The position numbers were made by a program, and so were the translations under genes. A DNA stretch of 62,973 nucleotides, filler included, from Cercozoa sp. M6MM (lineage: Eukaryota > Protista > Endomyxa: Ascetosporea): the NCBI GenBank assembly GCA_040357565.1. It is 7 parts of 7 records of this genome, joined end to end, with 100 filler letters (N's around TTAATTAATTAA, not from the genome) between each part and the next. Parts side by side here need not be neighbours in the genome. Positions count along the whole stretch, not along the records: positions 37,173 to 52,613 come from JBDODJ010000306.1; 6 more parts are not named here. One strand, 5' to 3'. Shown here in pieces: positions 37,173 through 49,781 of the stretch (positions within the stretch are counted from its first letter, which is position 1; every line of letters begins with the position of its first letter). The notes beneath the pieces are model-generated. The model was given only the letters and a program-made list of their open reading frames with translations. It had not been told where the DNA came from and ran no database searches.

Positions 37173-37212
<40 letters not shown>

Positions 37213-37219
37213 GGGCGGG

Positions 37220-38100
37220 TACAGGTCCCAGAGGCGTGGCCACATTCGAATCGACACCACGCATGCTGTGTGCGGCATCACCATCATCGTCATCGTCAAA
37301 CATTTCCTCTTCGTCATCCAGCATCTCGTCCTGGCAGCAGGGGGTAAAGGAGGGAAAGGGAAGGGGGGGTAAAGGTGCAATACGTCATCAAGATTCTCCT
37401 CGTCCTCGAACTGATCGTTGAAATCCTCATGGTTGCCTGTGTCGCCATCTGTGTCGGAATCATCCGACGTGATGTTTCCATCGCATGCACGGTCCAGTTC
37501 TTCGCACAGAGCACTCGCCACGAACTTGGCACACTTCTATTGACGCCACAAAACCACAGTATTTCACTCAAAAAGACTACCCATGTTTAATTCTCCAAAA
37601 CAAAATTCCTTGGAGAAACGCTCAAGAAACGCTAGCTTCAAACTTACAGGACCACCGTGGCCGTCACATACCGATACTGCGGCAAGCCATTCGTTCCTAA
37701 ACGCAGTCCAACACTCAAAGTTACGAAAGCACGCATCTCGCAAAAGCAAAAAAGGAACAACTTACGACGCGTGCTGCAAAAAGCTTCGCACGAATTCGGG
37801 TGCTGCTTGCGTGAAATTTACGCGCGCGTCGTGAAACGTCCCTGCCAACGATGAAACTCTTTATCGCATCGCAAAAACCTTCTCGAGCAAAAAGCTACAA
37901 GGCGAAACGGCCGAGGACGACGAGCGACGTGAAGATACGGCGGAAGACGAAGTGGATGGCGTGTTGGACTAGAAATAAAAAGGTGTATCACAGCGTGACT
38001 TGAACCAAGGTAAAACACAGGGGTAGCTACAGGTGATACAAGCTCGACAATGTCAGCTTCCGTCGCGATAACGTCGCCATCGTGGCGCGGACGCACTTCG
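37220..38100 (-). CDS. Hypothetical protein, 5' part, with a very acidic segment
   Basis: ASALCEELDRACDGNITSDDSDTDGD...DEMLDDEEEMFDDDDDGD; truncated at the contig edge. Confidence 0.4.
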
Positions 38101-38669: not shown

Positions 38670-40374
38670 ATGACATCATTGAAAGCACGTGCTGAGTCTT
38701 GGGCCATCCCATTGGATCAAGACCCATTGTTGTTCAAGTCGCGTCGCTTGCATCACTCTGCATGGGAGGTGTGGCCATCTTGTGTTTGCTTTGTTTACGA
38801 TGACGCTTTGACATCGACAGGTGTGCAAAGTGATCATCTTACTGCCTCTGATCGTTGTGCGATTGGTGCTGATTCTGGCTTGCTTCCTTTCAGGTTCGCT
38901 TTTGTTTCTCTTTAGCTTTACTTGTGCAATGCTTCACTTTTCCTTCAGGCATTCCACCCTATCTGCTGCTGTATTTGGTTCCCGAGTCAAAAGAAGAAAA
39001 AACACAAGATTTGCCTCCGCGCGGATTCCGCAAGTTCTGCTGCGACTGGTATTACCGAATCGCATGCCGCGTTTTTCGTACATTGGACACTATAAAGAAC
39101 TTATAAAAGTTTAAGCTGACATCTGCAGTCTGGTGTTGCGGAGTGCAACTGAAGGAGTTCGGAAAGAAGGAAGATGCGCACATTGTCGTTATGAACCATG
39201 GCAGGTAGATCTATGTTTCAAGGATCACAAAAGCGTAAAGTGTGACATTTCTTAGTGTGCTGGATGCTTTTATTGGCGGCGCCGTGTTGATGCCTTTGTA
39301 TGCATTGTCACTGGAGGCGAACTTTGCCATTCCGGGCTTTGGACACGCCTTGCGATTGGCCAAGTCGATCAGTCTGACGCGTGGTACACGATGTAAATCG
39401 CCGAGGTCCTTTCTCATTCTTTGACCCATTAGGCAATGGCCATGAGGTGCAAGAAACGATTCGGCGTCGTGCGCACTCGAAAGAATGGCAGCAGGCCAAT
39501 CACTGCTTGTTGCTTTATCCGGTGTGTTTGCTTATGTGTTTTTGTGCTATTTGACTGTCCCTTTGGCTGTATGATATGCAGGAAGGAACCTGTACGAATG
39601 GCGAGGCACTTGCAAAGTTCCAATTGGGCGCGTTCGCGCCGTTGGTACCCGTGCAGCCGTGTGTGTTGCAGTACCCGTGGGTGCATCACGATCCGACTTG
39701 GACTTTTAATCGCGTCAATCCGGGCCTCGTGCTGCTGCGCATTCTGTCGCAGTTGTACACTCAGGTGGAAGTGCATTTCTTGCCTGTGATGACGCCTGTG
39801 CCAAAAGAGACGCCCGATGCCTTTGCCGAGAGGGTGCGACAGGTCATGTCGCACAACCTACAAAACGGCTTGAGTGAGGTCACTCTGCGTGAGTCACTCA
39901 CACGCACCTATCTCAAAGCAGGCTACCCATGTCAACACATCAACGTGCTCGTCGAACGGGTCAAAGCTGCCGCGCGGATTCGCTCTGTGCGCACTGTGGC
40001 CAACCTCGCCACTCTGTTCAGTCATCTCGACCGTGACCACGATGGCTACTTGCGTTTCTCTGAATTGCCTGGTATCATTCCTTTTGTGTTTTCGTCAGAC
40101 ACAAAGAACTCGTTTGCTTTCAGATTCGTTGACAAAGCTTTTCGAGCTTCCAGCGGCAGCGAAATTGATCGAAACTCACGAGTTCGACACTCTCACGTTC
40201 TCCGAGTTGTGTGTCCTGCTGGAAGCCGTGGTACCTCCTGTTTCATAAAAAAACTGCCTTGCGACTGATCTTTTGTCTGAACAGACCGAGGACGAAGAGG
40301 CAGTGCGCGGGTTGCTTCAGAATGAGATTGCTCGCGCCAAGCGCCCACTCGGCGGTAAACTGAAAGACGCATAG
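38670..40374 (+). CDS. Lysophospholipid acyltransferase (LPCAT1/2-like) with EF-hand
   Basis: N-terminal TM (LLPLIVVRLVLIL), NHxSxLD motif, EGTCTNG...FQLGAF..LVPVQP, VEVHFLPV, EF-hand DRDHDGYLRFSE. Last exon TEDEEAVRGLLQNEIARAKRPLGGKLKDA*. Confidence 0.88.
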
Positions 40375-40964: not shown

Positions 40965-41467
40965 TATTTGTTCTGGACTAGGAGTTCCACCCTACAGTAG
41001 AAAACTTGGGTCTAGGTTCGCACGGATGCAGCGTGCGGATTAAACGAAAGCGAAGAAACGATATGCGCACGGCATCCATCGCAGACGGAAACAAACAGCA
41101 AATGACAACCGGCAAAAACCCTTCGAGAGCCTACAATCAACCTCCCGCGGTAGCACAACGATGTAAATTATTGGGTTTAATTTCACACCTTATGTGAAGA
41201 GATCGTTCTTTGCTCTAAACCAGAAAGGCTTGATTTTCTTGAGTCACCACCCCGATCGATGAGTCATCGGGAATGATCACTCGAGAGTTTCGCGTGGTCG
41301 CACTTTGACTTTGACAACGACTTGTTCTGCGCTACATTTAAGCGTTCTTTATTGTTATTTTTATCGCACTCAAGCGTTATCTCAGGTGAGACCCCTGCAC
41401 GGTCCATTGGGTGCTCGGGTGCATGTGTGTCATTTTGTCGGACAGACCCGCACACTGACTGTCGAAA

Positions 41468-42885
41468 ATGAAGCTTCTGATTGCGTCTCTGATGGCTGCC
41501 ACGGCACAGGCCGAGTGGGTCTCGTCGCCCAACGAGCTCTACGCCGTCAACATGCCGGATGCCCAGATGTAAATTTCAGCTTCCGAACTTCCTCCGTTAT
41601 GTTTTTACTGTTTTGGGTATCCTTGTCCAGGGTGGACGTGCAGGTGTACCAGGACTCGGAGGAGGTGCAAGCTGCTGCCCTCTCGCGCACGCTTGATCGT
41701 GTCGGCTTCAGCAACCCGCACGGTACGTCATGTTGAGTGCTTTTTATCTAAGAGTGTCAGTTGATCTATCCTACAAATTTTAAAACTGACTGGCTGTGTT
41801 TAGAGGAGATGTGGCTCCAGTCGGTCAAGGTGGCTGGCGGCACCAACTGCGCCGATTACTTCCTCTCGATGTTTGGCGACAACCCGAACGTACTCTACAA
41901 TTTCAAGTCGTTTTATGTAATTTTAATTTTTGGAGGATGGCAACAGATGGTGGACGACATTAGCGAGGGCGGCAAGGCTCTCCTGGTGCACGAGAAGGCT
42001 GGCCAGGTGCACGCTCTGCGTCATGCGTGTCTCGAGACGCCCAAGAAGGATGTCCTGTACTCTAGCTCTTTTTTTCTTGCATTTTTCTGATTGCTCCAGT
42101 TATAAGTCTCTGTGCTGAACAGTCTTGTGGCTGGCCACGTTGACAAAAAGTCGTCGGCGCACGAGGTCGACGCGCGTGACTTCAAGCTGCTTTCGTTGCT
42201 GCGCAACATCAGCTTTGACGTTCGTCGGTACACTCAGTCTTTTGGACAGTGTATATATGTATTATAAATATAAATTTATATTTGAATATAAATTTAGCAT
42301 CCAAAACTCGCCGGTGCTCGAGGAGAGCAAGCACGCCGGTCGCGTGAGCGACGAGGGCGACGATGTGTCGGCGCAGGTGTACCAATGCGGTGACACTAAG
42401 GACACGTGCCAGTGCGGCGCCAACAACCCGTTCCCGTGCTGTTCCAACGGCGGCAACTGCACCTGGGTATCACTGCTTCCCACCGGAGCGTTTTTTCATT
42501 TCGACTCGTGTCTGCAAAATGACAGTACGCGTGGCACTCGGGTTGCTGCCATTGGGGCATCAACGTGCCTGCTCGTCGTAACGCCAAGGAGTGGTCGTGG
42601 GAGCTGCGTAACGCAGGCTGGAAGATCACCACTGTACTGACTTTTTGAATTTGTCTGCCACATTTTTCTGTTTCATTTTTCTATTTCTGATATCCATCCG
42701 CACAGGGTCCGCGTGTCAACTCGATCTCGATTCGCAAGCTCGGTGACTACGGCCACGTCGCCTGGGTCTACAAGGTCTCGGGTGGCAACGTGCACGTGCG
42801 CGAGCAGGGCTGCTGGGGCTGGTACGGCACGCGCTCCTGGACCTACTCGTCGACCTACTTCCAGGAGTACGCCACGCCGTGGTAA
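41468..42885 (+). CDS. Secreted protein with a C-terminal CHAP (cysteine/histidine amidohydrolase-peptidase) domain, 8 exons
   Basis: Signal peptide MKLLIASLMAATAQA. Spliced C-terminus: NNPFPCCSNGGNCTWYAWHSG...RNAKEWSWELRNAGWKITTGPRVNSISIRKLGDYGHVAWVYKVSGGNVHVREQG...YATPW*. Confidence 0.85.
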
Positions 42886-42998
42886 ATGTTTCAGACTGAC
42901 TCAGATTGTGCTGTCTCCGCAAAGTCGGTACATACTAGACGAATGTTTCTGTCATACGCATTGCACTCAACTTGTGATCAACACCGGCCCCTTAAACT

Positions 42999-44202
42999 AT
43001 GTCATTGCCGGTTCCGGGTTCGAGGTTCCCAAGCGCTGTAGCACCAAAGCAGGACTACACAGAACAAATAATAAGAAGCACTAAAGCCAGTGGGTTCGCT
43101 TTTAGTATTGTTCAGTTTTCGTGCTGTTGTCAAACTGTGCTTTTCTTTTTGTGGTCCCAGTGCCAGCGACCTTGGAGTTGAGTTGCGGCTGTGGCGCACC
43201 CCACACCGACCTCTGGCGTATCCGATGCCAATACAAGAAATCCACGGACTTTGCCTTTGTGCTGGGCGATGAGCATGTGCGCGCTCACTCTGCCGTGGTA
43301 CGGGACTGTTCTCTTGCGTGGATTCGGAGTGTTTATTTGAAGCCGGTGGTAGATCATGGGAACTTCCAAAGTCGTTGAGCGAATGGTGACGGTAGATCTG
43401 CATTGTGAAATTGTTGCCCTTTGGATTGCGAACACATATTAAAATATAAAGAGCAACTTCAAGAACAAGTTCCAGTACGCCGTCGAAGGGTAAAATTATC
43501 TCGGCTGCAAGATCTCGCCGAGAGTTTTTCTGTGTGAGCAGCTTTAGTTCAGTGGTCGTGAAGAAATTTGTTGCGCTGTCGTATGGGTACATTTAAATAA
43601 ACAATTTTCCCTTGCAGTTGGCAAGATTTTGTTTTTTTGAAGACTCTGCGTCAAAGTGAAGCTCACGGAAATGAATGATTTGCTCCGATTCGCCGATTCA
43701 CTGCTAGCGCCGTCGATTTCAGGTACAGCATCTTTCGTTTTGGTTTTGCGGCAGTTGCACACTGCACATTACATTTCTTCTTGAATTGATTTTATTTTGC
43801 GACTGAATGTTAGCGTTGATTGTGGACGCCATCGCACCGGAACAGCTGTCGTTGCCGCAAAGAACAGTCGTTGTTGTATCCTCTCTGTAAGTCTTTGTGC
43901 TGTATTGTTGCAAGCAAACACGCTGATAGGACGCGCTGTTGCAAGTGTACCTGCGTGAGAAGAATCAAATCGCTGGTGGCCACAAGAAGCTGAAGAAAGG
44001 CAAGAAGAACAAGATGCGAAACCAAAAGAGCAAAACTTCCGTTCAAGTCTCAGCAGGTGACAGTGACATGACTGGCAGTGCCACCAGTCTCGATGCCGAG
44101 TCTCTCGACTGCGATAGCGACAACGAACTTGACTCTGACTACGGCATCGTTCCGGACGACACTGACTTTGTAATACCCCTTCATGCCTGTTTGGATCCCT
44201 GA
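42999..44202 (+). CDS. BTB/POZ-domain protein
   Basis: Spliced: STDFAFVLGDEHVRAHSAVIMGTSKVVERMVT...FSSVVVKKFVALSYG...MNDLLRFADSLL, followed by a K-rich and then an acidic tail. Confidence 0.78.
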
Positions 44203-46459: not shown

Positions 46460-49400
46460 GATGGCATTCACAATCACGTAACTGAACAGTCGCCCGACCT
46501 CCAGCACGTCATCGTCACGCCGCTCGCGGGAAAACTATCCGCGCGAAACTTACGCTGCTTTACCACAAAGTCGGCAGCAGAACGGCGGCACCAAGCTGTG
46601 TGCGTTCTTAAGGTCAGTTGCACGGAGTGAAGTCTGCCTTTAGTCAGGTTTTAGTGCGAGAAACGACTACCGGTATTTTGCCGATACACTTGCCGATCAT
46701 CTGCGGCTGTATGATATGCATGACAGCACGTATAGATAGTCCGAAAAGCGCCAATGCGATACTGGCCTGGCAGCTCGAAAATAAGCGCGAAGCGCACCAA
46801 CTTTCTTCTCGCTTCGGGTAAGTTCAATTCGAATGAAAAACTCAGTTCACTTTGCCAAGCTTCGTTCTTTGTGGCAGTGGCGACCCTGTTGTCCATTATT
46901 GCAATTGGACTCTTGATTGGCAGTAGTGTCACCCGTCGAAGTGCTTCCAATGTGCGGCAGTTTGTTGAGCTGTGTACACCTGCTATCATTATGTTGTCCG
47001 TAGGCTTCGAATCGAATGGCGACTTTGGCCGTCCCGAGCGAAGACAAGAGCGCATTGTTGTCTACTCCCATCGCAGAAAAGACGCTCACTGCTTACTTTT
47101 TGTATGCTGAGATTTTTTAATTTGGCGACGGCGGATTCATTAATTTCTGACTGAACTGAGTGTGCTTGATTACAGCAACATCACCAACCTCGTGGACGTG
47201 GTCACCGAGGGACAACCTCCACAACCCGAGAAGATCGGCCCTTTCACATGGAAGGTACTGCACCCATATGTTTGTTTGCTGAAACTGCTTTTTTAAACCT
47301 TTTGTATTCTTGTCTTAGGTGTTTGAGAGCCGTCGTGACGTCGCATTTTCACCAGATGAGTCCGAAGTCTCCTTTCACATGTCGCGACGCGCCGTGTTTG
47401 ATCCAGTCAACAGCTGCAAGAATTGTGAGCCTTGCCTTGTCTTTCTCCTCGAGTTTAATTGGACGGGTATTGTGTTTCTTGAGTACAGGCAAGGAAACTG
47501 ACACGGTGAACACGGTGTACTTGACGTTTCTCGAATTGCTGATGAAAATCGGAGGCGAAAGCCAGCTTCCGTTCGTGTTTGCCGGACCAGTGCTGGAAAT
47601 GTTGGTGGCAGAGTTGTCTCAAAAGTCTGAACTGGCTTCAGAGCAGGTAGTATTTTCCATCTGTAGCGAACAAGTACGACTAAAACAAGCCTTGTAGGAT
47701 ATCGCGACACAATGGGCTCAAGGCGGAATTCTTCCCCAGTCGCTCGGTCTTGAGTGTAAATACCTCTCATTCACAGTGGACAAATTTACAACGCGTGTCT
47801 GTTTAGACCACTTGTGGTTGAAGGAGCACGAAGGAAGCGCTCAAGTGGTCCATTTGACACCTGAGCGTGCAGCCGAAATCATTTTCGCCGACCGACCTGG
47901 CGCAGCTTTCGCACGACAGGGTACCCGTCCAACTGAATTCTGTGATCCCTTGAGTCTTTATACTATTCTTCCTCTAGACGAAGAACGCGGTTTTTGGATT
48001 GCGAGCGAGTTCCTGCGCGATGAGCGCTCGATGGGTCTCCACCTCGCGTCGCAGCGCTTCGACCTGACTGACGAGGAAGGTGCCTTATACAACTTCAGTC
48101 GATTTCCCCTTGCAGTTGAGTGAATTAAACCGTATGAGACAGGTCTGTCGATCAAGCAGTACTTGAAGTGGGTGGTGGCACGCCAGATGCGTCCAATGCT
48201 CGAGAACGCAGGCGTTCTACTGTCGCAGCAGCCGCCGCACATCTTTTTGCAAAAGCCGGTCAAGTCGCTTCTCTTTGGCGATGAGAAGTTGGGTACTCGT
48301 TTTGAAACACTTTCTTGAACACACCCTACAGTTTTTACTCCGATTTTGTTGGAACAGACGCTCTTGCCGCCTTACTGGAACGAACTGATGCGGAGGTGCA
48401 CTTTAACTTGAGTTTTTAATTCGCCTACTGGGGGAAAAACGCTTAACCAAGATTAGAACTTCGATTTTTTTGACAGGACGACGATCAAGGCGGCGTGCAA
48501 CAGCCGCTTCCATTCTTCCCGTTGAGTGACGAGACGTTGGACCAGTTCCGACTGACGGTGTCGACGGGTGCTGACTCCAAGCAGGTTGGCGGCAAGCTGC
48601 TTCGAGTCAACGGAGTCAATGAGCTGCCGTCGCGCGATCAGGACCCGTTCTCCGCGATGCACTTTGCGTGCCACACGCGTGTGCCCATCCGAGGCAGTGT
48701 CAACGGTGTGTTTGGCGACACTCGCGGATCAGGAGCTTTCGCCTCGTGGTCGGATGCAGTCAAGGTGACCGACACGGTCGACATGTTCTCGCCGCTGCTG
48801 ATGCGACCGATCCGTCTGCGTCAGCACCGATCGACCACTCTGGGTGACGGTGTGCACGCTCGTTTGCTGGTGCCCGCCGTCTCGCAGTTCCGCGAGAGCG
48901 ACATGAACGACTTTGTTCGAGACAATGTGCTCGACTCGCGCTGCCGCTCTAAAACTCCAGTACGCTGCTTAACTTCAACAACTTTCGCTTCCGCGTGGAT
49001 GCACCTGAATGTGAATAAATTTGTTTTCAGTTGCTGCTGACTCCGACCAAGTACACCGGAACTGGCAACTGGAAGGTTATTGCGAGTGACAGCAAACTGA
49101 AGAGCAAGAGTCCAGACGACAACGACTTTTTTGCCGATCCGGATGGTTTGGCTTTTTCTCCTGTTTTCGGTTTCAGTTTTTGCTCTATTTTCTGTTTCTG
49201 ACTGTCTGTTGTTTGAGCAGAAGTTTCGAGTCGTCGCGCGGAAGTTCTGGTGGACGCAGCGAGCGGCGTCGCTCTGCGGACCACCGAGTGGGCACAAGGC
49301 AACGTGCTGGTGCCGGCCTGGCTTACAGCAACGCAGGAGTCTGAGGCCAAGGACATGAAGCATGAGTTCCTGACGCCACTATTTGCTGTTAAGATGGAGC

Positions 49401-49781
49401 AGAAACTGTCTCCAAAGCAACGCGAAGCAGTTGCGGCCCTGAACTCGGCGATTCGCCGACAGACGCGCCTGGTGTGGTTCGGAATCGCTCTGATGGCCGC
49501 TGCTTTGGTGCAGTTGGAACTTTACTTCTAAAAAGGGGGTGTACAGTCGGAACGAATTCTGTAAACCGCAGGTGCTCTTTGGCATGCTGTTCCTGCGCAT
49601 GCGCACAGAGTCGCTATCGGGAGGCGGTCGCAAGAGCGTTTCTGCCGCCAAGCAACGCTTCTCGCAGGTGGAAACCGACTCGCAAGCTCCGCTGCAGGAA
49701 GCCGCCTTCCGTATTCAAGAGGTCGCCACTGTGGACGACACTCAGGACGACCAGACCGTTGAGCAAGTCGAACTGGCTTGA
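46460..49781 (+). CDS. CD36/LIMP-2 (class B scavenger receptor, lysosomal membrane protein) family
   Basis: N-terminal TM (VATLLSIIAIGLLIG), NITNLVDVVTEGQPPQPEKIGPFTWK, KPVKSLLFG, FSPLLMRPI, VDAASGVAL, and a C-terminal TM. 5' end uncertain. Confidence 0.75.

What the first reader, a model, noticed from the sequence alone, without database searches (positions are those of the whole stretch)
41468..42885. Intron-containing, secreted CHAP peptidoglycan hydrolase in a eukaryote
Seen: removing 7 GT-AG introns gives one open frame. It has a signal peptide, a roughly 180-aa uncharacterised N-terminal region, a Cys-rich segment (CGDTKDTCQCGANNPFPCC) and a complete CHAP-like domain: GNCTWYAW (catalytic Cys), NAKEW, YGHVAWV (catalytic His), VREQ. 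The ORF track misses it because the Cys and His motifs lie on different exons. Known: CHAP domains are mainly bacterial/phage cell-wall amidases and endopeptidases; the eukaryotic examples I know are largely trypanothione/glutathionylspermidine amidase fusions. Inference: this is a domesticated, horizontally acquired lysin used to digest prey bacteria or for defence, with a novel pro- or targeting domain.
Basis: partly seen in the sequence, partly recalled or inferred. Interest (0 to 1): 0.82.

Follow-up and report, generated by a model that had tools for sequence, protein, structure and literature searches.

The report
Amoeba gene for bacterial-type wall-cutting enzyme
A marine amoeba (Cercozoa sp. 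M6MM, now Lemnamoeba sinaloensis) carries a real eight-exon gene for a secreted CHAP-type bacterial cell-wall hydrolase whose only detectable relatives are bacterial, a clear but not unprecedented case of a bacteria-eating eukaryote taking over a bacterial weapon.

Summary
Eight exons on the + strand (41468-42885), joined by seven GT-AG introns of 57-81 nt, give a 951-nt open frame of 316 codons. A search with exon 8 alone returned a public 316-aa protein (P0001, NCBI MES1912874.1, "hypothetical protein", Cercozoa sp. M6MM). It contains all eight exon translations in order.

P0001 passes Pfam CHAP (39.7 bits; cut-off 26). It keeps Cys219, His274 and Glu290, and its modelled C-terminal domain superposes on solved CHAP hydrolases (Z 12-14).

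All detected relatives are bacterial or metagenomic, at up to 60% identity over residues ~190-310. Most are Myxococcota. No other eukaryote and no phage was found.

In the tree the gene is sister to a metagenomic protein from a bacterial-type contig. Both sit in a clade of Planctomycetota and Holophagae proteins with the same architecture: signal peptide, ~170-aa N-domain, Cys-rich CHAP at the C-terminus. This placement is not robust.

The "novel" N-terminal region has no significant sequence relatives but probably has the PsbP/Mog1/DcrB-like fold that its bacterial counterparts have.

Verdict: a genuine horizontally acquired, intron-invaded, probably prey-digesting peptidoglycan hydrolase. 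It is a new, undescribed member of a known kind, alongside tick dae2, Trichomonas NlpC/P60 and Saprolegnia CHAP.

The parts
41468..41568 (+). Exon 1 (residues 1-33 plus 2 nt). Residues 1-15 (41468-41512), MKLLIASLMAATAQA, look like a signal peptide with Ala at -3 and -1.
   Evidence: In-frame TGA at 41456. The signal peptide is read from the sequence; no predictor was run.
41569..41630 (+). Intron 1, 62 nt, GTAAAT...CAG, GC 40%.
   Evidence: In-frame stop at 41570 if retained.
41631..41722 (+). Exon 2 (residues 34-64, N-domain).
   Evidence: GC3 0.80.
41723..41803 (+). Intron 2, 81 nt, GTACGT...TAG.
41804..41889 (+). Exon 3 (residues 65-93, N-domain).
   Evidence: GC3 0.89.
41890..41946 (+). 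Intron 3, 57 nt, GTACTC...CAG. Its length is a multiple of 3 and it has no in-frame stop, so retaining it would keep the frame.
41947..42056 (+). Exon 4 (residues 94-130, N-domain).
42057..42122 (+). Intron 4, 66 nt, GTACTC...CAG.
42123..42227 (+). Exon 5 (residues 130-165, end of the N-domain).
42228..42297 (+). Intron 5, 70 nt, GTACAC...TAG, GC 20%.
42298..42466 (+). Exon 6 (residues 165-221). It holds a low-confidence linker, the Cys-rich extension VYQCGDTKDTCQCGANNPFPCCSNGG (42377-42457), and the catalytic Cys219 codon TGC at 42458-42460.
   Evidence: Cys195, 202, 204, 212, 213 and 219 are invariant among 12 relatives. The tblastn match of bacterial proteins ends at 42466.
42467..42525 (+). 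Intron 6, 59 nt, GTATCA...CAG. It interrupts the CHAP domain two residues after the catalytic Cys.
42526..42633 (+). Exon 7 (residues 222-257): YAWHSGCCHWG...NAKEW, the helical part of the CHAP domain.
42634..42705 (+). Intron 7, 72 nt, GTACTG...CAG. An in-frame TGA at 42646 would truncate the protein before the His if the intron were retained.
42706..42885 (+). Exon 8 (residues 258-316 plus TAA). It holds His274 (CAC, 42754-42756), Glu290 (GAG, 42802-42804), and Gly292 where relatives have Asn.
   Evidence: This exon alone hits the C-terminal half of Pfam CHAP, E 4.5e-4. Also.

Best explanation
This is a genuine nuclear gene of the bacterivorous marine amoeba Cercozoa sp. M6MM (Lemnamoeba sinaloensis; Apofilosa, Rhizaria).

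**Product.** It encodes a 316-aa secretory-pathway protein made of:
- a signal peptide (residues 1-15);
- a fast-evolved N-terminal domain of about 150 aa, probably with a Mog1/PsbP/DcrB-like fold;
- a short linker;
- a C-terminal CHAP (papain-like Cys/His) domain preceded by a Cys-rich, probably disulfide-stapled extension. The catalytic residues are Cys219, His274 and Glu290.

**Origin.** The gene came from a bacterium by horizontal transfer, most likely as a whole two-domain gene. The family is one of secreted Cys-rich CHAP proteins that is abundant in predatory Myxococcota. The same two-domain architecture occurs in Planctomycetota and Acidobacteriota. After transfer the gene gained seven spliceosomal introns and a eukaryotic coding composition.

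**Inferred mechanism.** The protein enters the ER and is delivered to phagosomes/lysosomes or outside the cell. There the Cys219 thiolate, activated by His274 and Glu290, cleaves an amide or peptide bond of the peptidoglycan stem or cross-bridge of ingested or neighbouring bacteria. The eukaryote has no peptidoglycan, so it needs no immunity protein.

**Shown:** gene structure, domain identity, catalytic residues, bacterial kinship. **Inferred:** secretion, substrate, biological role, role of the N-domain.
For: **Gene model.**. It is identical to the public protein P0001 = MES1912874.1 on a 15,441-bp contig of the same size as this piece.

**CHAP identity.**
- Pfam PF05257: 39.7 bits against a cut-off of 26, residues 217-291.
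- phmmer to the solved CHAP 2k3a, E 1.2e-6, with GNCTWY aligned on GQCTWY and YGHVAWV on YGHVAYV.
- The AF2 model has pLDDT >90 over residues 190-316.
- Structural matches: Z 13.8 to 5t1q, 13.0 to PcsB, 12.1 to 2k3a, at rmsd 2.3-2.9 A over 106-118 residues.
- Cys219, His274 and Glu290 are invariant in relatives.

**Bacterial kinship.**
- HMMER of exon 8 against 1.84 billion representatives gave 35 hits. Every one that carries a name is bacterial.
- Two word searches found only bacterial or metagenomic CHAP proteins, at most 60% identical.
- 109 matching loci in bacterial genomes, mostly Myxococcota.
- 167 matching loci in metagenomes.

**Placement in the tree.**
- Sister to P0013 (support 100/92), inside a clade (97/84) made up only of proteins with the architecture N-domain plus C-terminal CHAP.
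- P0013's contig carries uninterrupted glutamate dehydrogenase, thioredoxin and MutS genes, so it is bacterial.
- P0001 and P0013 alone share VPARRNAK and Ile in place of the 'ACR' Cys.

**Eukaryotic residence.**
- Seven AT-rich GT-AG insertions. Two of them lie inside the CHAP module at points where bacterial homologues are continuous.
- GC3 is about equally high in both halves of the gene, 0.81 and 0.85.

**N-domain fold.**
- The bacterial counterpart is modelled at pLDDT 82-96 and hits PsbP/CyanoP.
- The P0001 N-domain hits SciW (Z 9.4), DcrB (7.7), PA94, EagT6, Mog1 and CyanoP.
- Single-sequence ESM Atlas searches put both N-domains next to the same DcrB, DUF4946 and 139-aa clusters.

**Organism.** Per its descriptions, an amoeba isolated from fish gills; food vacuoles are noted in its description (PMC11069148, PMC13746701).
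Against: - No transcript or protein evidence for this gene could be examined. The public model comes from an RNA-seq-trained pipeline, but there is no per-gene evidence.
- No enzymatic data exist for any member of this Cys-rich subfamily.
- P0001 has Gly292 where nearly all relatives have the Asn of the CHAP Cys-His-Glu-Asn relay. The relay as such is recalled from the literature on 2k3a, not checked here.
- The placement in the tree is fragile. P0001 and P0013 are both long branches. When P0013 and three long-branched rows were removed and two rows added, P0001 moved next to another long-branched pair among the myxobacterial sequences. The AU test does not reject a tree that excludes it from the N-domain clade, p 0.152.
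- N-domain homology to the bacterial N-domains is not significant by sequence: hhalign probability 1.3%, and 84 of 3000 shuffles score as high.
- The AF2 model of the N-domain is of low confidence (pLDDT 40-74). It was built with those bacterial sequences in its alignment, so it is not independent of them.
- Cys-His geometry could not be measured because no coordinates are returned.
Confidence: 0.8

Rival explanations
1. Bacterial contamination, or a decaying bacterial fragment wrongly modelled with 'introns'. On this reading the gene belongs to a food bacterium or a chimeric contig.
For: All relatives are bacterial. The draft assembly was made from a culture that contained bacteria and needed decontamination. 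The gene's GC3 (0.83) is higher than that of candidate neighbouring coding stretches, 0.59-0.69.
Against: - The seven interruptions all have GT...AG ends, a narrow size range (57-81 nt) and much lower GC than the exons.
- The two inside the CHAP module are clean insertions relative to bacterial homologues.
- The best bacterial identity is only 60%.
- The 15.4-kb contig has no long bacterial-type ORFs.
- The record is deposited in NCBI as Cercozoa sp. M6MM. The paper says scaffolds flagged by NCBI's contamination screen were excluded from the submission.
Confidence: 0.02
2. Ancient, vertically inherited eukaryotic CHAP family: not a transfer, only poorly sampled.
For: Rhizarian genomes are few. 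Transcriptome-only relatives (Filoreta, Gromia) may not be in the databases searched. The exhaustive search used only a 59-aa exon. Seven introns and an ameliorated composition argue for long residence.
Against: No eukaryotic relative appeared in any search. The gene nests among bacterial sequences and shares rare characters with one bacterial protein. The Cys-rich extension and the two-domain architecture are bacterial family traits.
Confidence: 0.05
3. The protein is a CHAP-fold enzyme with a substrate other than peptidoglycan, or a catalytically weakened binding protein. Candidate substrates are a protease target, a glutathionylspermidine-type amide or a host-fish molecule.
For: CHAP folds include glutathionylspermidine and trypanothione amidases, which match the model at Z 9.3-9.8. 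Gly292 replaces a near-invariant Asn. The organism lives on fish gills. No member of this subfamily has been assayed.
Against: - Sequence and structure matches are strongest to peptidoglycan hydrolases: PcsB, S. aureus amidase, SsaA-type proteins and phage CHAP lysins.
- Cys, His and Glu are intact.
- Relatives are secreted or surface proteins of predatory bacteria.
- P0011, a bacterial relative, also has Gly at that site.
Confidence: 0.12
4. The gene derives from a phage endolysin rather than from a bacterial chromosomal gene.
For: Many CHAP domains are phage lysins, and the model matches several of them at Z 10-12. P0013 gives weak PHROGs endolysin hits, E about 1e-4.
Against: - No tblastn match in 50,697 phage records at E<=1.
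- No relative in the viral contigs.
- No PHROGs family for P0001.
- Close relatives sit beside housekeeping genes, or are large MYXO-CTERM surface proteins.
Confidence: 0.03

Closest known systems
Secreted Cys-rich CHAP proteins of Myxococcota (annotated 'CHAP domain-containing' or 'MYXO-CTERM domain-containing' protein), and the roughly 310-440-aa PsbP-like-plus-CHAP proteins of Planctomycetota and Holophagae MAGs and of metagenomes (P0013, P0007, P0027, P0011, L009, L042, L003)
   Same: - 50-60% identity over the whole module VYQCG...CxCG..NP(Y/F)PCC.NGGNCTW...YGHVA.V...E, with eight conserved non-catalytic Cys.
- The second group also shares the signal peptide, an N-domain of about 170 aa, and a CHAP domain that ends the protein.
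   Different: - The amoeba gene has seven introns.
- Its N-domain is unrecognisable by sequence.
- It has Gly292 for Asn.
- It lacks the long Cys-rich repeat region and MYXO-CTERM tail of the myxobacterial proteins.
- None of these bacterial proteins has been characterised experimentally, as far as the searches here show.
Saprolegnia parasitica secreted CHAP gene family (seven genes, e.g. SPRG_15528; PMC3681718)
   Same: A eukaryote with secreted CHAP-domain proteins, proposed to have been acquired from bacteria.
   Different: It is an oomycete, and the family is expanded there, whereas a single copy was found here. I could not obtain those sequences, so kinship with P0001 was not tested. None surfaced among the relatives of P0001.
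Laterally acquired NlpC/P60 peptidoglycan hydrolases of Trichomonas vaginalis (PMC6299479, PMC10461829) and the tick 'domesticated amidase effector' dae2 (bioRxiv 10.1101/2020.04.10.036376)
   Same: The same concept: a papain-like Cys/His cell-wall amidase or endopeptidase taken from bacteria and used by a eukaryote against bacteria.
   Different: They belong to different families of the superfamily (NlpC/P60, Tae2), came from different donors and are in different recipients. The Tae3 structure matches the model only at Z 7.4. Their activity has been shown experimentally; here it has not.
Solved CHAP domains: S. saprophyticus 2k3a, S. aureus 2lrj and 5t1q, S. pneumoniae PcsB 4cgk, LysK CHAPK 4csh
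   Same: The fold (Z 10-14). The catalytic Cys and His motifs and the Glu align.
   Different: Only 13-28% identity. They have no Cys-rich N-terminal extension and no PsbP-like partner domain.

Membership tests
CHAP domain (Pfam PF05257; papain-like Cys/His amidohydrolase/peptidase) | Score above Pfam's gathering threshold. | tested here: met
   P0001 scores 39.7 bits against a cut-off of 26, E 6.9e-10, residues 217-291. Exon 8 alone scores 21.1 bits, E 4.5e-4.
CHAP domain (Pfam PF05257; papain-like Cys/His amidohydrolase/peptidase) | Catalytic Cys at the start of a helix, and catalytic His in a beta-strand, both conserved. | tested here: met
   Cys219 (helix 219-231) and His274 (strand 274-282) in the model. 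They align with the Cys and His motifs of 2k3a and are invariant in 12 relatives. The Cys-His distance was not measurable.
CHAP domain (Pfam PF05257; papain-like Cys/His amidohydrolase/peptidase) | Third polar residue (Glu/Asp/Asn) after the His, and the following Asn of the Cys-His-Glu-Asn relay (the relay is recalled from the 2k3a literature). | tested here: inconclusive
   Glu290 is present and invariant. The Asn two residues later is Gly292 in P0001, while it is Asn in at least 90% of relatives.
CHAP domain (Pfam PF05257; papain-like Cys/His amidohydrolase/peptidase) | Papain-like alpha+beta fold. | tested here: met
   pLDDT >90 over residues 190-316. Z 13.8 to 5t1q, 13.0 to 4cgk and 12.1 to 2k3a. 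Foldseek E about 1e-5.
CHAP domain (Pfam PF05257; papain-like Cys/His amidohydrolase/peptidase) | Hydrolysis of peptidoglycan amide or peptide bonds. | not testable with these tools
   Needs a zymogram or muropeptide analysis.
Eukaryotic genes of bacterial origin (horizontally acquired antibacterial hydrolases) | Physically part of a eukaryotic genome, with spliceosomal introns. | tested here: met
   Seven GT-AG introns, two of them splitting the bacterial-type domain. The contig is deposited as Cercozoa sp. M6MM. Chromosomal linkage in the long-read assembly was not checked.
Eukaryotic genes of bacterial origin (horizontally acquired antibacterial hydrolases) | Nested within bacterial sequences in a phylogeny. 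| tested here: inconclusive
   All 71 other rows of the tree are bacterial or metagenomic, and the gene sits inside them. The exact sister group is unstable, and the AU test gives p 0.152.
Eukaryotic genes of bacterial origin (horizontally acquired antibacterial hydrolases) | Absent from other eukaryotes. | tested here: inconclusive
   No eukaryotic hit. Limits: the exhaustive search used a 59-aa exon, the word searches are length- and word-limited, and most hits carry no taxon.
Mog1/PsbP/DcrB/DUF1795-like fold (N-terminal domain) | Sequence match to a family model (PsbP, DcrB, DUF1795 and the like). | tested here: not met
   No Pfam family for any N-terminal exon or for P0001 residues 1-190. 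The profile of nine bacterial N-domains does not match significantly.
Mog1/PsbP/DcrB/DUF1795-like fold (N-terminal domain) | Alpha-beta-alpha sandwich fold with the order of strands and helices seen in PsbP/Mog1. | tested here: inconclusive
   - The low-confidence model (pLDDT 40-74) matches SciW at Z 9.4, DcrB 7.7, Mog1 6.5 and CyanoP 6.2.
- Its order of strands and helices matches the confident model of the bacterial counterpart.
- ESM Atlas leads agree.
Phage endolysins | Relatives in phage genomes or in PHROGs lysis families. | tested here: not met
   Searches were blank for P0001.
Saprolegnia parasitica CHAP family | Specific sequence kinship. | not tested
   The sequences were not obtainable by accession with these tools.

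The most novel reading that the evidence does not exclude
The whole two-domain gene (PsbP-like N-domain plus Cys-rich CHAP) was taken from a bacterium. The family seems to be a predatory or competitive weapon of Myxococcota and Planctomycetota, and an amoeboid predator now uses it for the same job. Because the ancestor had no introns, all seven introns (one per about 120 coding nt) are post-transfer gains at known positions. That would make this locus a clean natural marker for the rate and site preference of intron gain in Rhizaria. The N-domain may act as a built-in inhibitor or envelope-targeting module; the bacterial counterpart's fold also matches the T6SS immunity protein Tsi3.
Probability: 0.35. 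Interest if true: 0.6.

Novelty: new member of a known kind. Interest (0 to 1): 0.45.

Why it matters
- It adds Rhizaria (Apofilosa) to the short list of eukaryotic lineages that have taken over bacterial papain-like cell-wall hydrolases.
- It points to an uncharacterised, Cys-rich CHAP subfamily, centred on predatory myxobacteria, as the source.
- The gene is annotated only as "hypothetical protein", and neither paper on this organism's genome mentions CHAP or peptidoglycan.
- All seven introns must postdate the transfer, so the locus is a tidy example for studying intron gain.
- If the enzyme is active it may be of practical interest as a disulfide-stabilised lytic enzyme.
- It does not change the general picture: transfers of this kind are well documented.

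Tried and rejected
**Searches that gave nothing or little**
- Exon-by-exon Pfam: only exon 8 gave a (sub-threshold) CHAP hit; the other seven exons gave nothing.
- tblastn of exon 8 against phage records and a viral-contig scan: nothing.
- Rfam on the piece: nothing.
- The bacterial promoter/terminator scan was uninformative.
- Word search with P0013's N-domain found only P0013 itself. The word search is therefore too insensitive for this domain, and a blank for P0001's N-domain would mean nothing.
- The first alignment (A2) was too divergent for a genome scan. A tighter one (A3) worked.
- PHROGs gave no family for P0001. NCBIfam gave only domain-level similarity to PcsB, far below its cut-off.

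**Tests that came out negative**
- hhalign and an hmmsearch shuffle test for N-domain homology were not significant. I do not claim sequence homology.
- Introner-like origin of the introns: rejected, as there is no similarity among them.
- A second copy on the contig: none.
- An attempt to identify a neighbouring MCU gene by its WDxMEP motif failed. The neighbours remain only weakly typed: EF-hand, CD36, HisKA/MCU, all below threshold.

**Tools and steps not used**
The context of P0013 was obtained through the search for related loci instead.
The full-length protein was used only as database id P0001.
- No contig looked human.
Full report
**1. The observation**

Reading 41200-43200 and testing splice sites by script gives eight exons on the + strand:
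- 41468-41568
- 41631-41722
- 41804-41889
- 41947-42056
- 42123-42227
- 42298-42466
- 42526-42633
- 42706-42885

Together they make 951 nt, i.e. 316 codons plus TAA. The seven introns are 57-81 nt long and all are GT...AG. Five of the seven begin GTAC. Intron GC is 20-47%, against 62% in the exons, and GC3 over the whole coding sequence is 0.83.

Each exon on its own shows GC3 of 0.74-0.92 in the model's frame. Five introns would introduce an in-frame stop if retained. Intron 3 (57 nt) would not. An in-frame TGA lies 12 nt upstream of the ATG.

Cys219 lies in exon 6 and His274 in exon 8.

**2. How the full-length protein was obtained**

- Pfam on the eight exon translations gave one hit. Exon 8 matches the C-terminal half of CHAP (positions 46-80 of 81), E 4.5e-4.
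- HMMER with exon 8 alone against 1.84 billion representatives returned a 316-aa protein, P0001, that is 100% identical over residues 258-316.
- P0001 is NCBI MES1912874.1, "MAG: hypothetical protein MHM6MM_005098 [Cercozoa sp. M6MM]". Its contig is 15,441 bp, exactly the length of this piece.
- All eight exon translations occur in P0001 in order, separated only by the split-codon residues.

That model comes from funannotate trained with transcriptome reads.

**3. The organism**

[quoted passage not shown] It was placed in Apofilosa (Rhizaria), has a genome GC of 52.8%, and was described in 2026 as Lemnamoeba sinaloensis (PMC11069148, PMC13746701). Neither paper mentions CHAP or peptidoglycan.

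**4. The C-terminal domain**

- P0001 passes Pfam CHAP: 39.7 bits against a cut-off of 26, residues 217-291.
- phmmer against PDB sequences finds the S. saprophyticus CHAP 2k3a (E 1.2e-6), 2lrj, a phage phi812 CHAP and PcsB. GNCTWY aligns on GQCTWY, YGHVAWV on YGHVAYV, and VREQ on VSEM.
- An AlphaFold model built on 37 sequences has pLDDT >90 over residues 190-316.
- Foldseek and VIA-align match it to CHAP hydrolases: 5t1q Z 13.8, PcsB 13.0, 2lrj 12.6, 2k3a 12.1, phage lysins 10-12, and Gsp amidase 9.8.
- Cys219, His274 and Glu290 are invariant among close relatives.
- P0001 has Gly292 where at least 90% of relatives have Asn.
- NCBIfam gives only domain-level similarity to PcsB.

**5. The Cys-rich segment**

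VYQCG..D.C.CG..NP(Y/F)PCC.NGGNCTW is conserved residue for residue in bacterial relatives. There are eight conserved non-catalytic cysteines: 195, 202, 204, 212, 213, 228, 229 and 293. It is the hallmark of one CHAP subfamily. I infer that it is disulfide-stapled.

**6. Relatives and origin**

*What the searches found*
- Word searches with P0001, whole and with the module alone, found only bacterial or metagenomic CHAP proteins, at most 60% identical over about 37% of the query. Examples are "CHAP domain-containing protein [Myxococcaceae bacterium]" and "MYXO-CTERM domain-containing protein".
- Of the 35 HMMER hits, 20 were looked up for names. Those that carry an organism name are bacterial, and none is eukaryotic.
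- A scan of 185,579 bacterial and archaeal species genomes found 109 loci. Most are Myxococcota, with some Planctomycetota, Acidobacteriota and others.
- A metagenome scan found 167 loci.
- Phage records, viral contigs and PHROGs gave nothing for P0001.

*Two architectures*
- Myxobacterial type: signal peptide, then the CHAP module, then a long Cys-rich region or MYXO-CTERM tail.
- Compact type of roughly 310-440 aa: signal peptide, an N-domain of about 170 aa, then the CHAP module at or near the C-terminus. It occurs in Planctomycetota MAGs (L009, L042), a Holophagae MAG (L003) and metagenomes (P0007, P0013 = L081, P0027, P0011, L107, L110).

P0001 has the second architecture.

*The tree*

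In a maximum-likelihood tree of the module (72 rows, 128 columns), P0001 is sister to P0013 (support 100/92). Both lie in a clade (97/84) that holds only proteins of the second architecture. P0013's contig carries uninterrupted glutamate dehydrogenase, thioredoxin and MutS genes, so it is bacterial. P0001 and P0013 alone share VPARRNAK and an Ile in place of the otherwise invariant Cys of "ACR".

*Caveats*
- Both are long branches.
- In a second tree, without P0013 and three long-branched rows and with two rows added, P0001 moves next to another long-branched pair among the myxobacterial sequences.
- The AU test does not reject a tree that keeps it outside the compact-architecture clade (p 0.152).

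A bacterial origin is therefore well supported. The donor phylum is not resolved.

**7. Evidence that the gene resides in the eukaryote**

- Bacterial homologues align without gaps across the exon 6/7 and 7/8 junctions. The tblastn match ends exactly at 42466. Introns 6 and 7 are therefore pure insertions with splice signals.
- The introns do not resemble one another, so there is no introner-like family.
- GC3 is similarly high in the N-domain half (0.81) and the CHAP half (0.85). It differs from that of P0013's gene (0.56), L009's (0.26) and a myxobacterial gene (0.93).
- The contig has no long bacterial-type ORFs.
- The gene's GC3 is higher than that of the few candidate neighbouring coding stretches, 0.59-0.69. 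With so small a sample, that cannot be interpreted.

**8. The N-terminal region (residues 16 to about 165)**

*Sequence.* There is no Pfam hit. There is no significant match to a profile of nine bacterial N-domains: hhalign E 0.039 with probability 1.3%, and 84 of 3000 shuffles score as high in hmmsearch. Only the first strand looks alike by eye: EW-VSS..LYAVNMP against EW...SS..YTV.YP.

*Structure.* The bacterial counterpart (L009) is modelled with confidence, pLDDT 82-96. Its best matches are CyanoP/PsbP. It also matches Tsi3, LpqN, Apa and SciW.

P0001's region is modelled poorly (pLDDT 40-74), but with the same order of strands and helices. It matches the same fold group: SciW Z 9.4, DcrB 7.7, PA94 7.3, EagT6 7.1, Mog1 6.5 and CyanoP 6.2. 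That model had four of the bacterial sequences in its alignment, so it is not independent of them.

*Independent line.* The single-sequence ESM Atlas places both P0001's and P0013's N-regions next to the same DcrB, DUF4946 and 139-aa clusters. Its own model of P0013 is PsbP-like, TM 0.70-0.78.

*Reading.* I read the region as a strongly diverged PsbP/Mog1/DcrB-like domain inherited along with the CHAP module, with a probability of about 0.65. Its role (targeting, regulation or inhibition) is unknown.

**9. Mechanism**

*Shown:*
- a complete CHAP catalytic core (Cys219, His274, Glu290);
- an N-terminal hydrophobic leader with an AQA-E cleavage motif.

*Inferred:*
- entry into the secretory or endolysosomal pathway;
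- cleavage of peptidoglycan stem-peptide or amide bonds of ingested or nearby bacteria;
- no need for an immunity protein, because the amoeba has no peptidoglycan.

*Uncertain:*
- the effect of Gly292;
- the substrate bond;
- the localisation.

**10. Comparison with what is known**

Eukaryotic take-over of bacterial papain-like wall hydrolases is established for three cases:
- Trichomonas NlpC/P60 (PMC6299479, PMC10461829);
- tick dae2 (bioRxiv 10.1101/2020.04.10.036376);
- as a genomic inference, secreted CHAP genes in Saprolegnia parasitica (PMC3681718).

This gene is a new, undescribed instance, in a new eukaryotic lineage and from a distinct CHAP subfamily. It is not a new kind of system.

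**11. Limits**

- No coordinates were available for measuring the Cys-His distance.
- No signal-peptide predictor was available.
- No per-gene RNA evidence was available.
- The Saprolegnia sequences could not be fetched.
- The exhaustive search used only exon 8.

Noticed in passing
window 37173-37210: The piece begins with a 38-nt poly-C run. The organism's genome papers say the draft contigs tend to break at simple repeats. An acidic open frame on the - strand (37174-37536, GC3 0.70) runs off the contig end.
   Followed up: no
window 39555-40265 (+), 48474-49037 (+), 49217-49528 (+): These are candidate exons of neighbouring genes, with only sub-threshold Pfam hits (EF-hand; CD36; HisKA/MCU). 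Their GC3 is 0.59-0.69, clearly lower than the 0.83 of the CHAP gene. No MCU signature motif was found.
   Followed up: partly
window 41890-41946: Intron 3 is 57 nt long, a multiple of three, and has no in-frame stop. Retaining it would add 19 residues without breaking the frame, so it could yield an alternative isoform.
   Followed up: no
window 42808-42810 (Gly292); P0011: P0001 has Gly where nearly all relatives have the Asn that follows the catalytic Glu (E-x-N). One bacterial relative, P0011, also has Gly, so the change need not abolish activity.
   Followed up: partly
L009:2980-3912 (Planctomycetota MAG) and relatives L042, L003, L107, L110: This is an uncharacterised bacterial family: signal peptide, PsbP-like domain, then Cys-rich CHAP. 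The PsbP-like domain's model also matches the type VI immunity protein Tsi3 (4luq_C, Foldseek E 6e-4). That raises the idea of a built-in inhibitor. In L009 the gene lies next to an FtsX-type permease gene.
   Followed up: partly
L038, L043, L047, L056: These MAGs are titled 'uncultured Enterobacteriaceae'. They encode myxobacterial-type CHAP proteins of about 950-1100 aa and branch among Myxococcales in the tree. The bins are probably mislabelled.
   Followed up: no
P0002, P0006, P0044 and other myxobacterial relatives: The CHAP module is followed by repeated CG.CG..R.C Cys-rich units, a MopE-like 'putative metal-binding motif' (PF11617) and a MYXO-CTERM sorting tail. This suggests surface-displayed lytic enzymes of predatory bacteria.
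   Followed up: no
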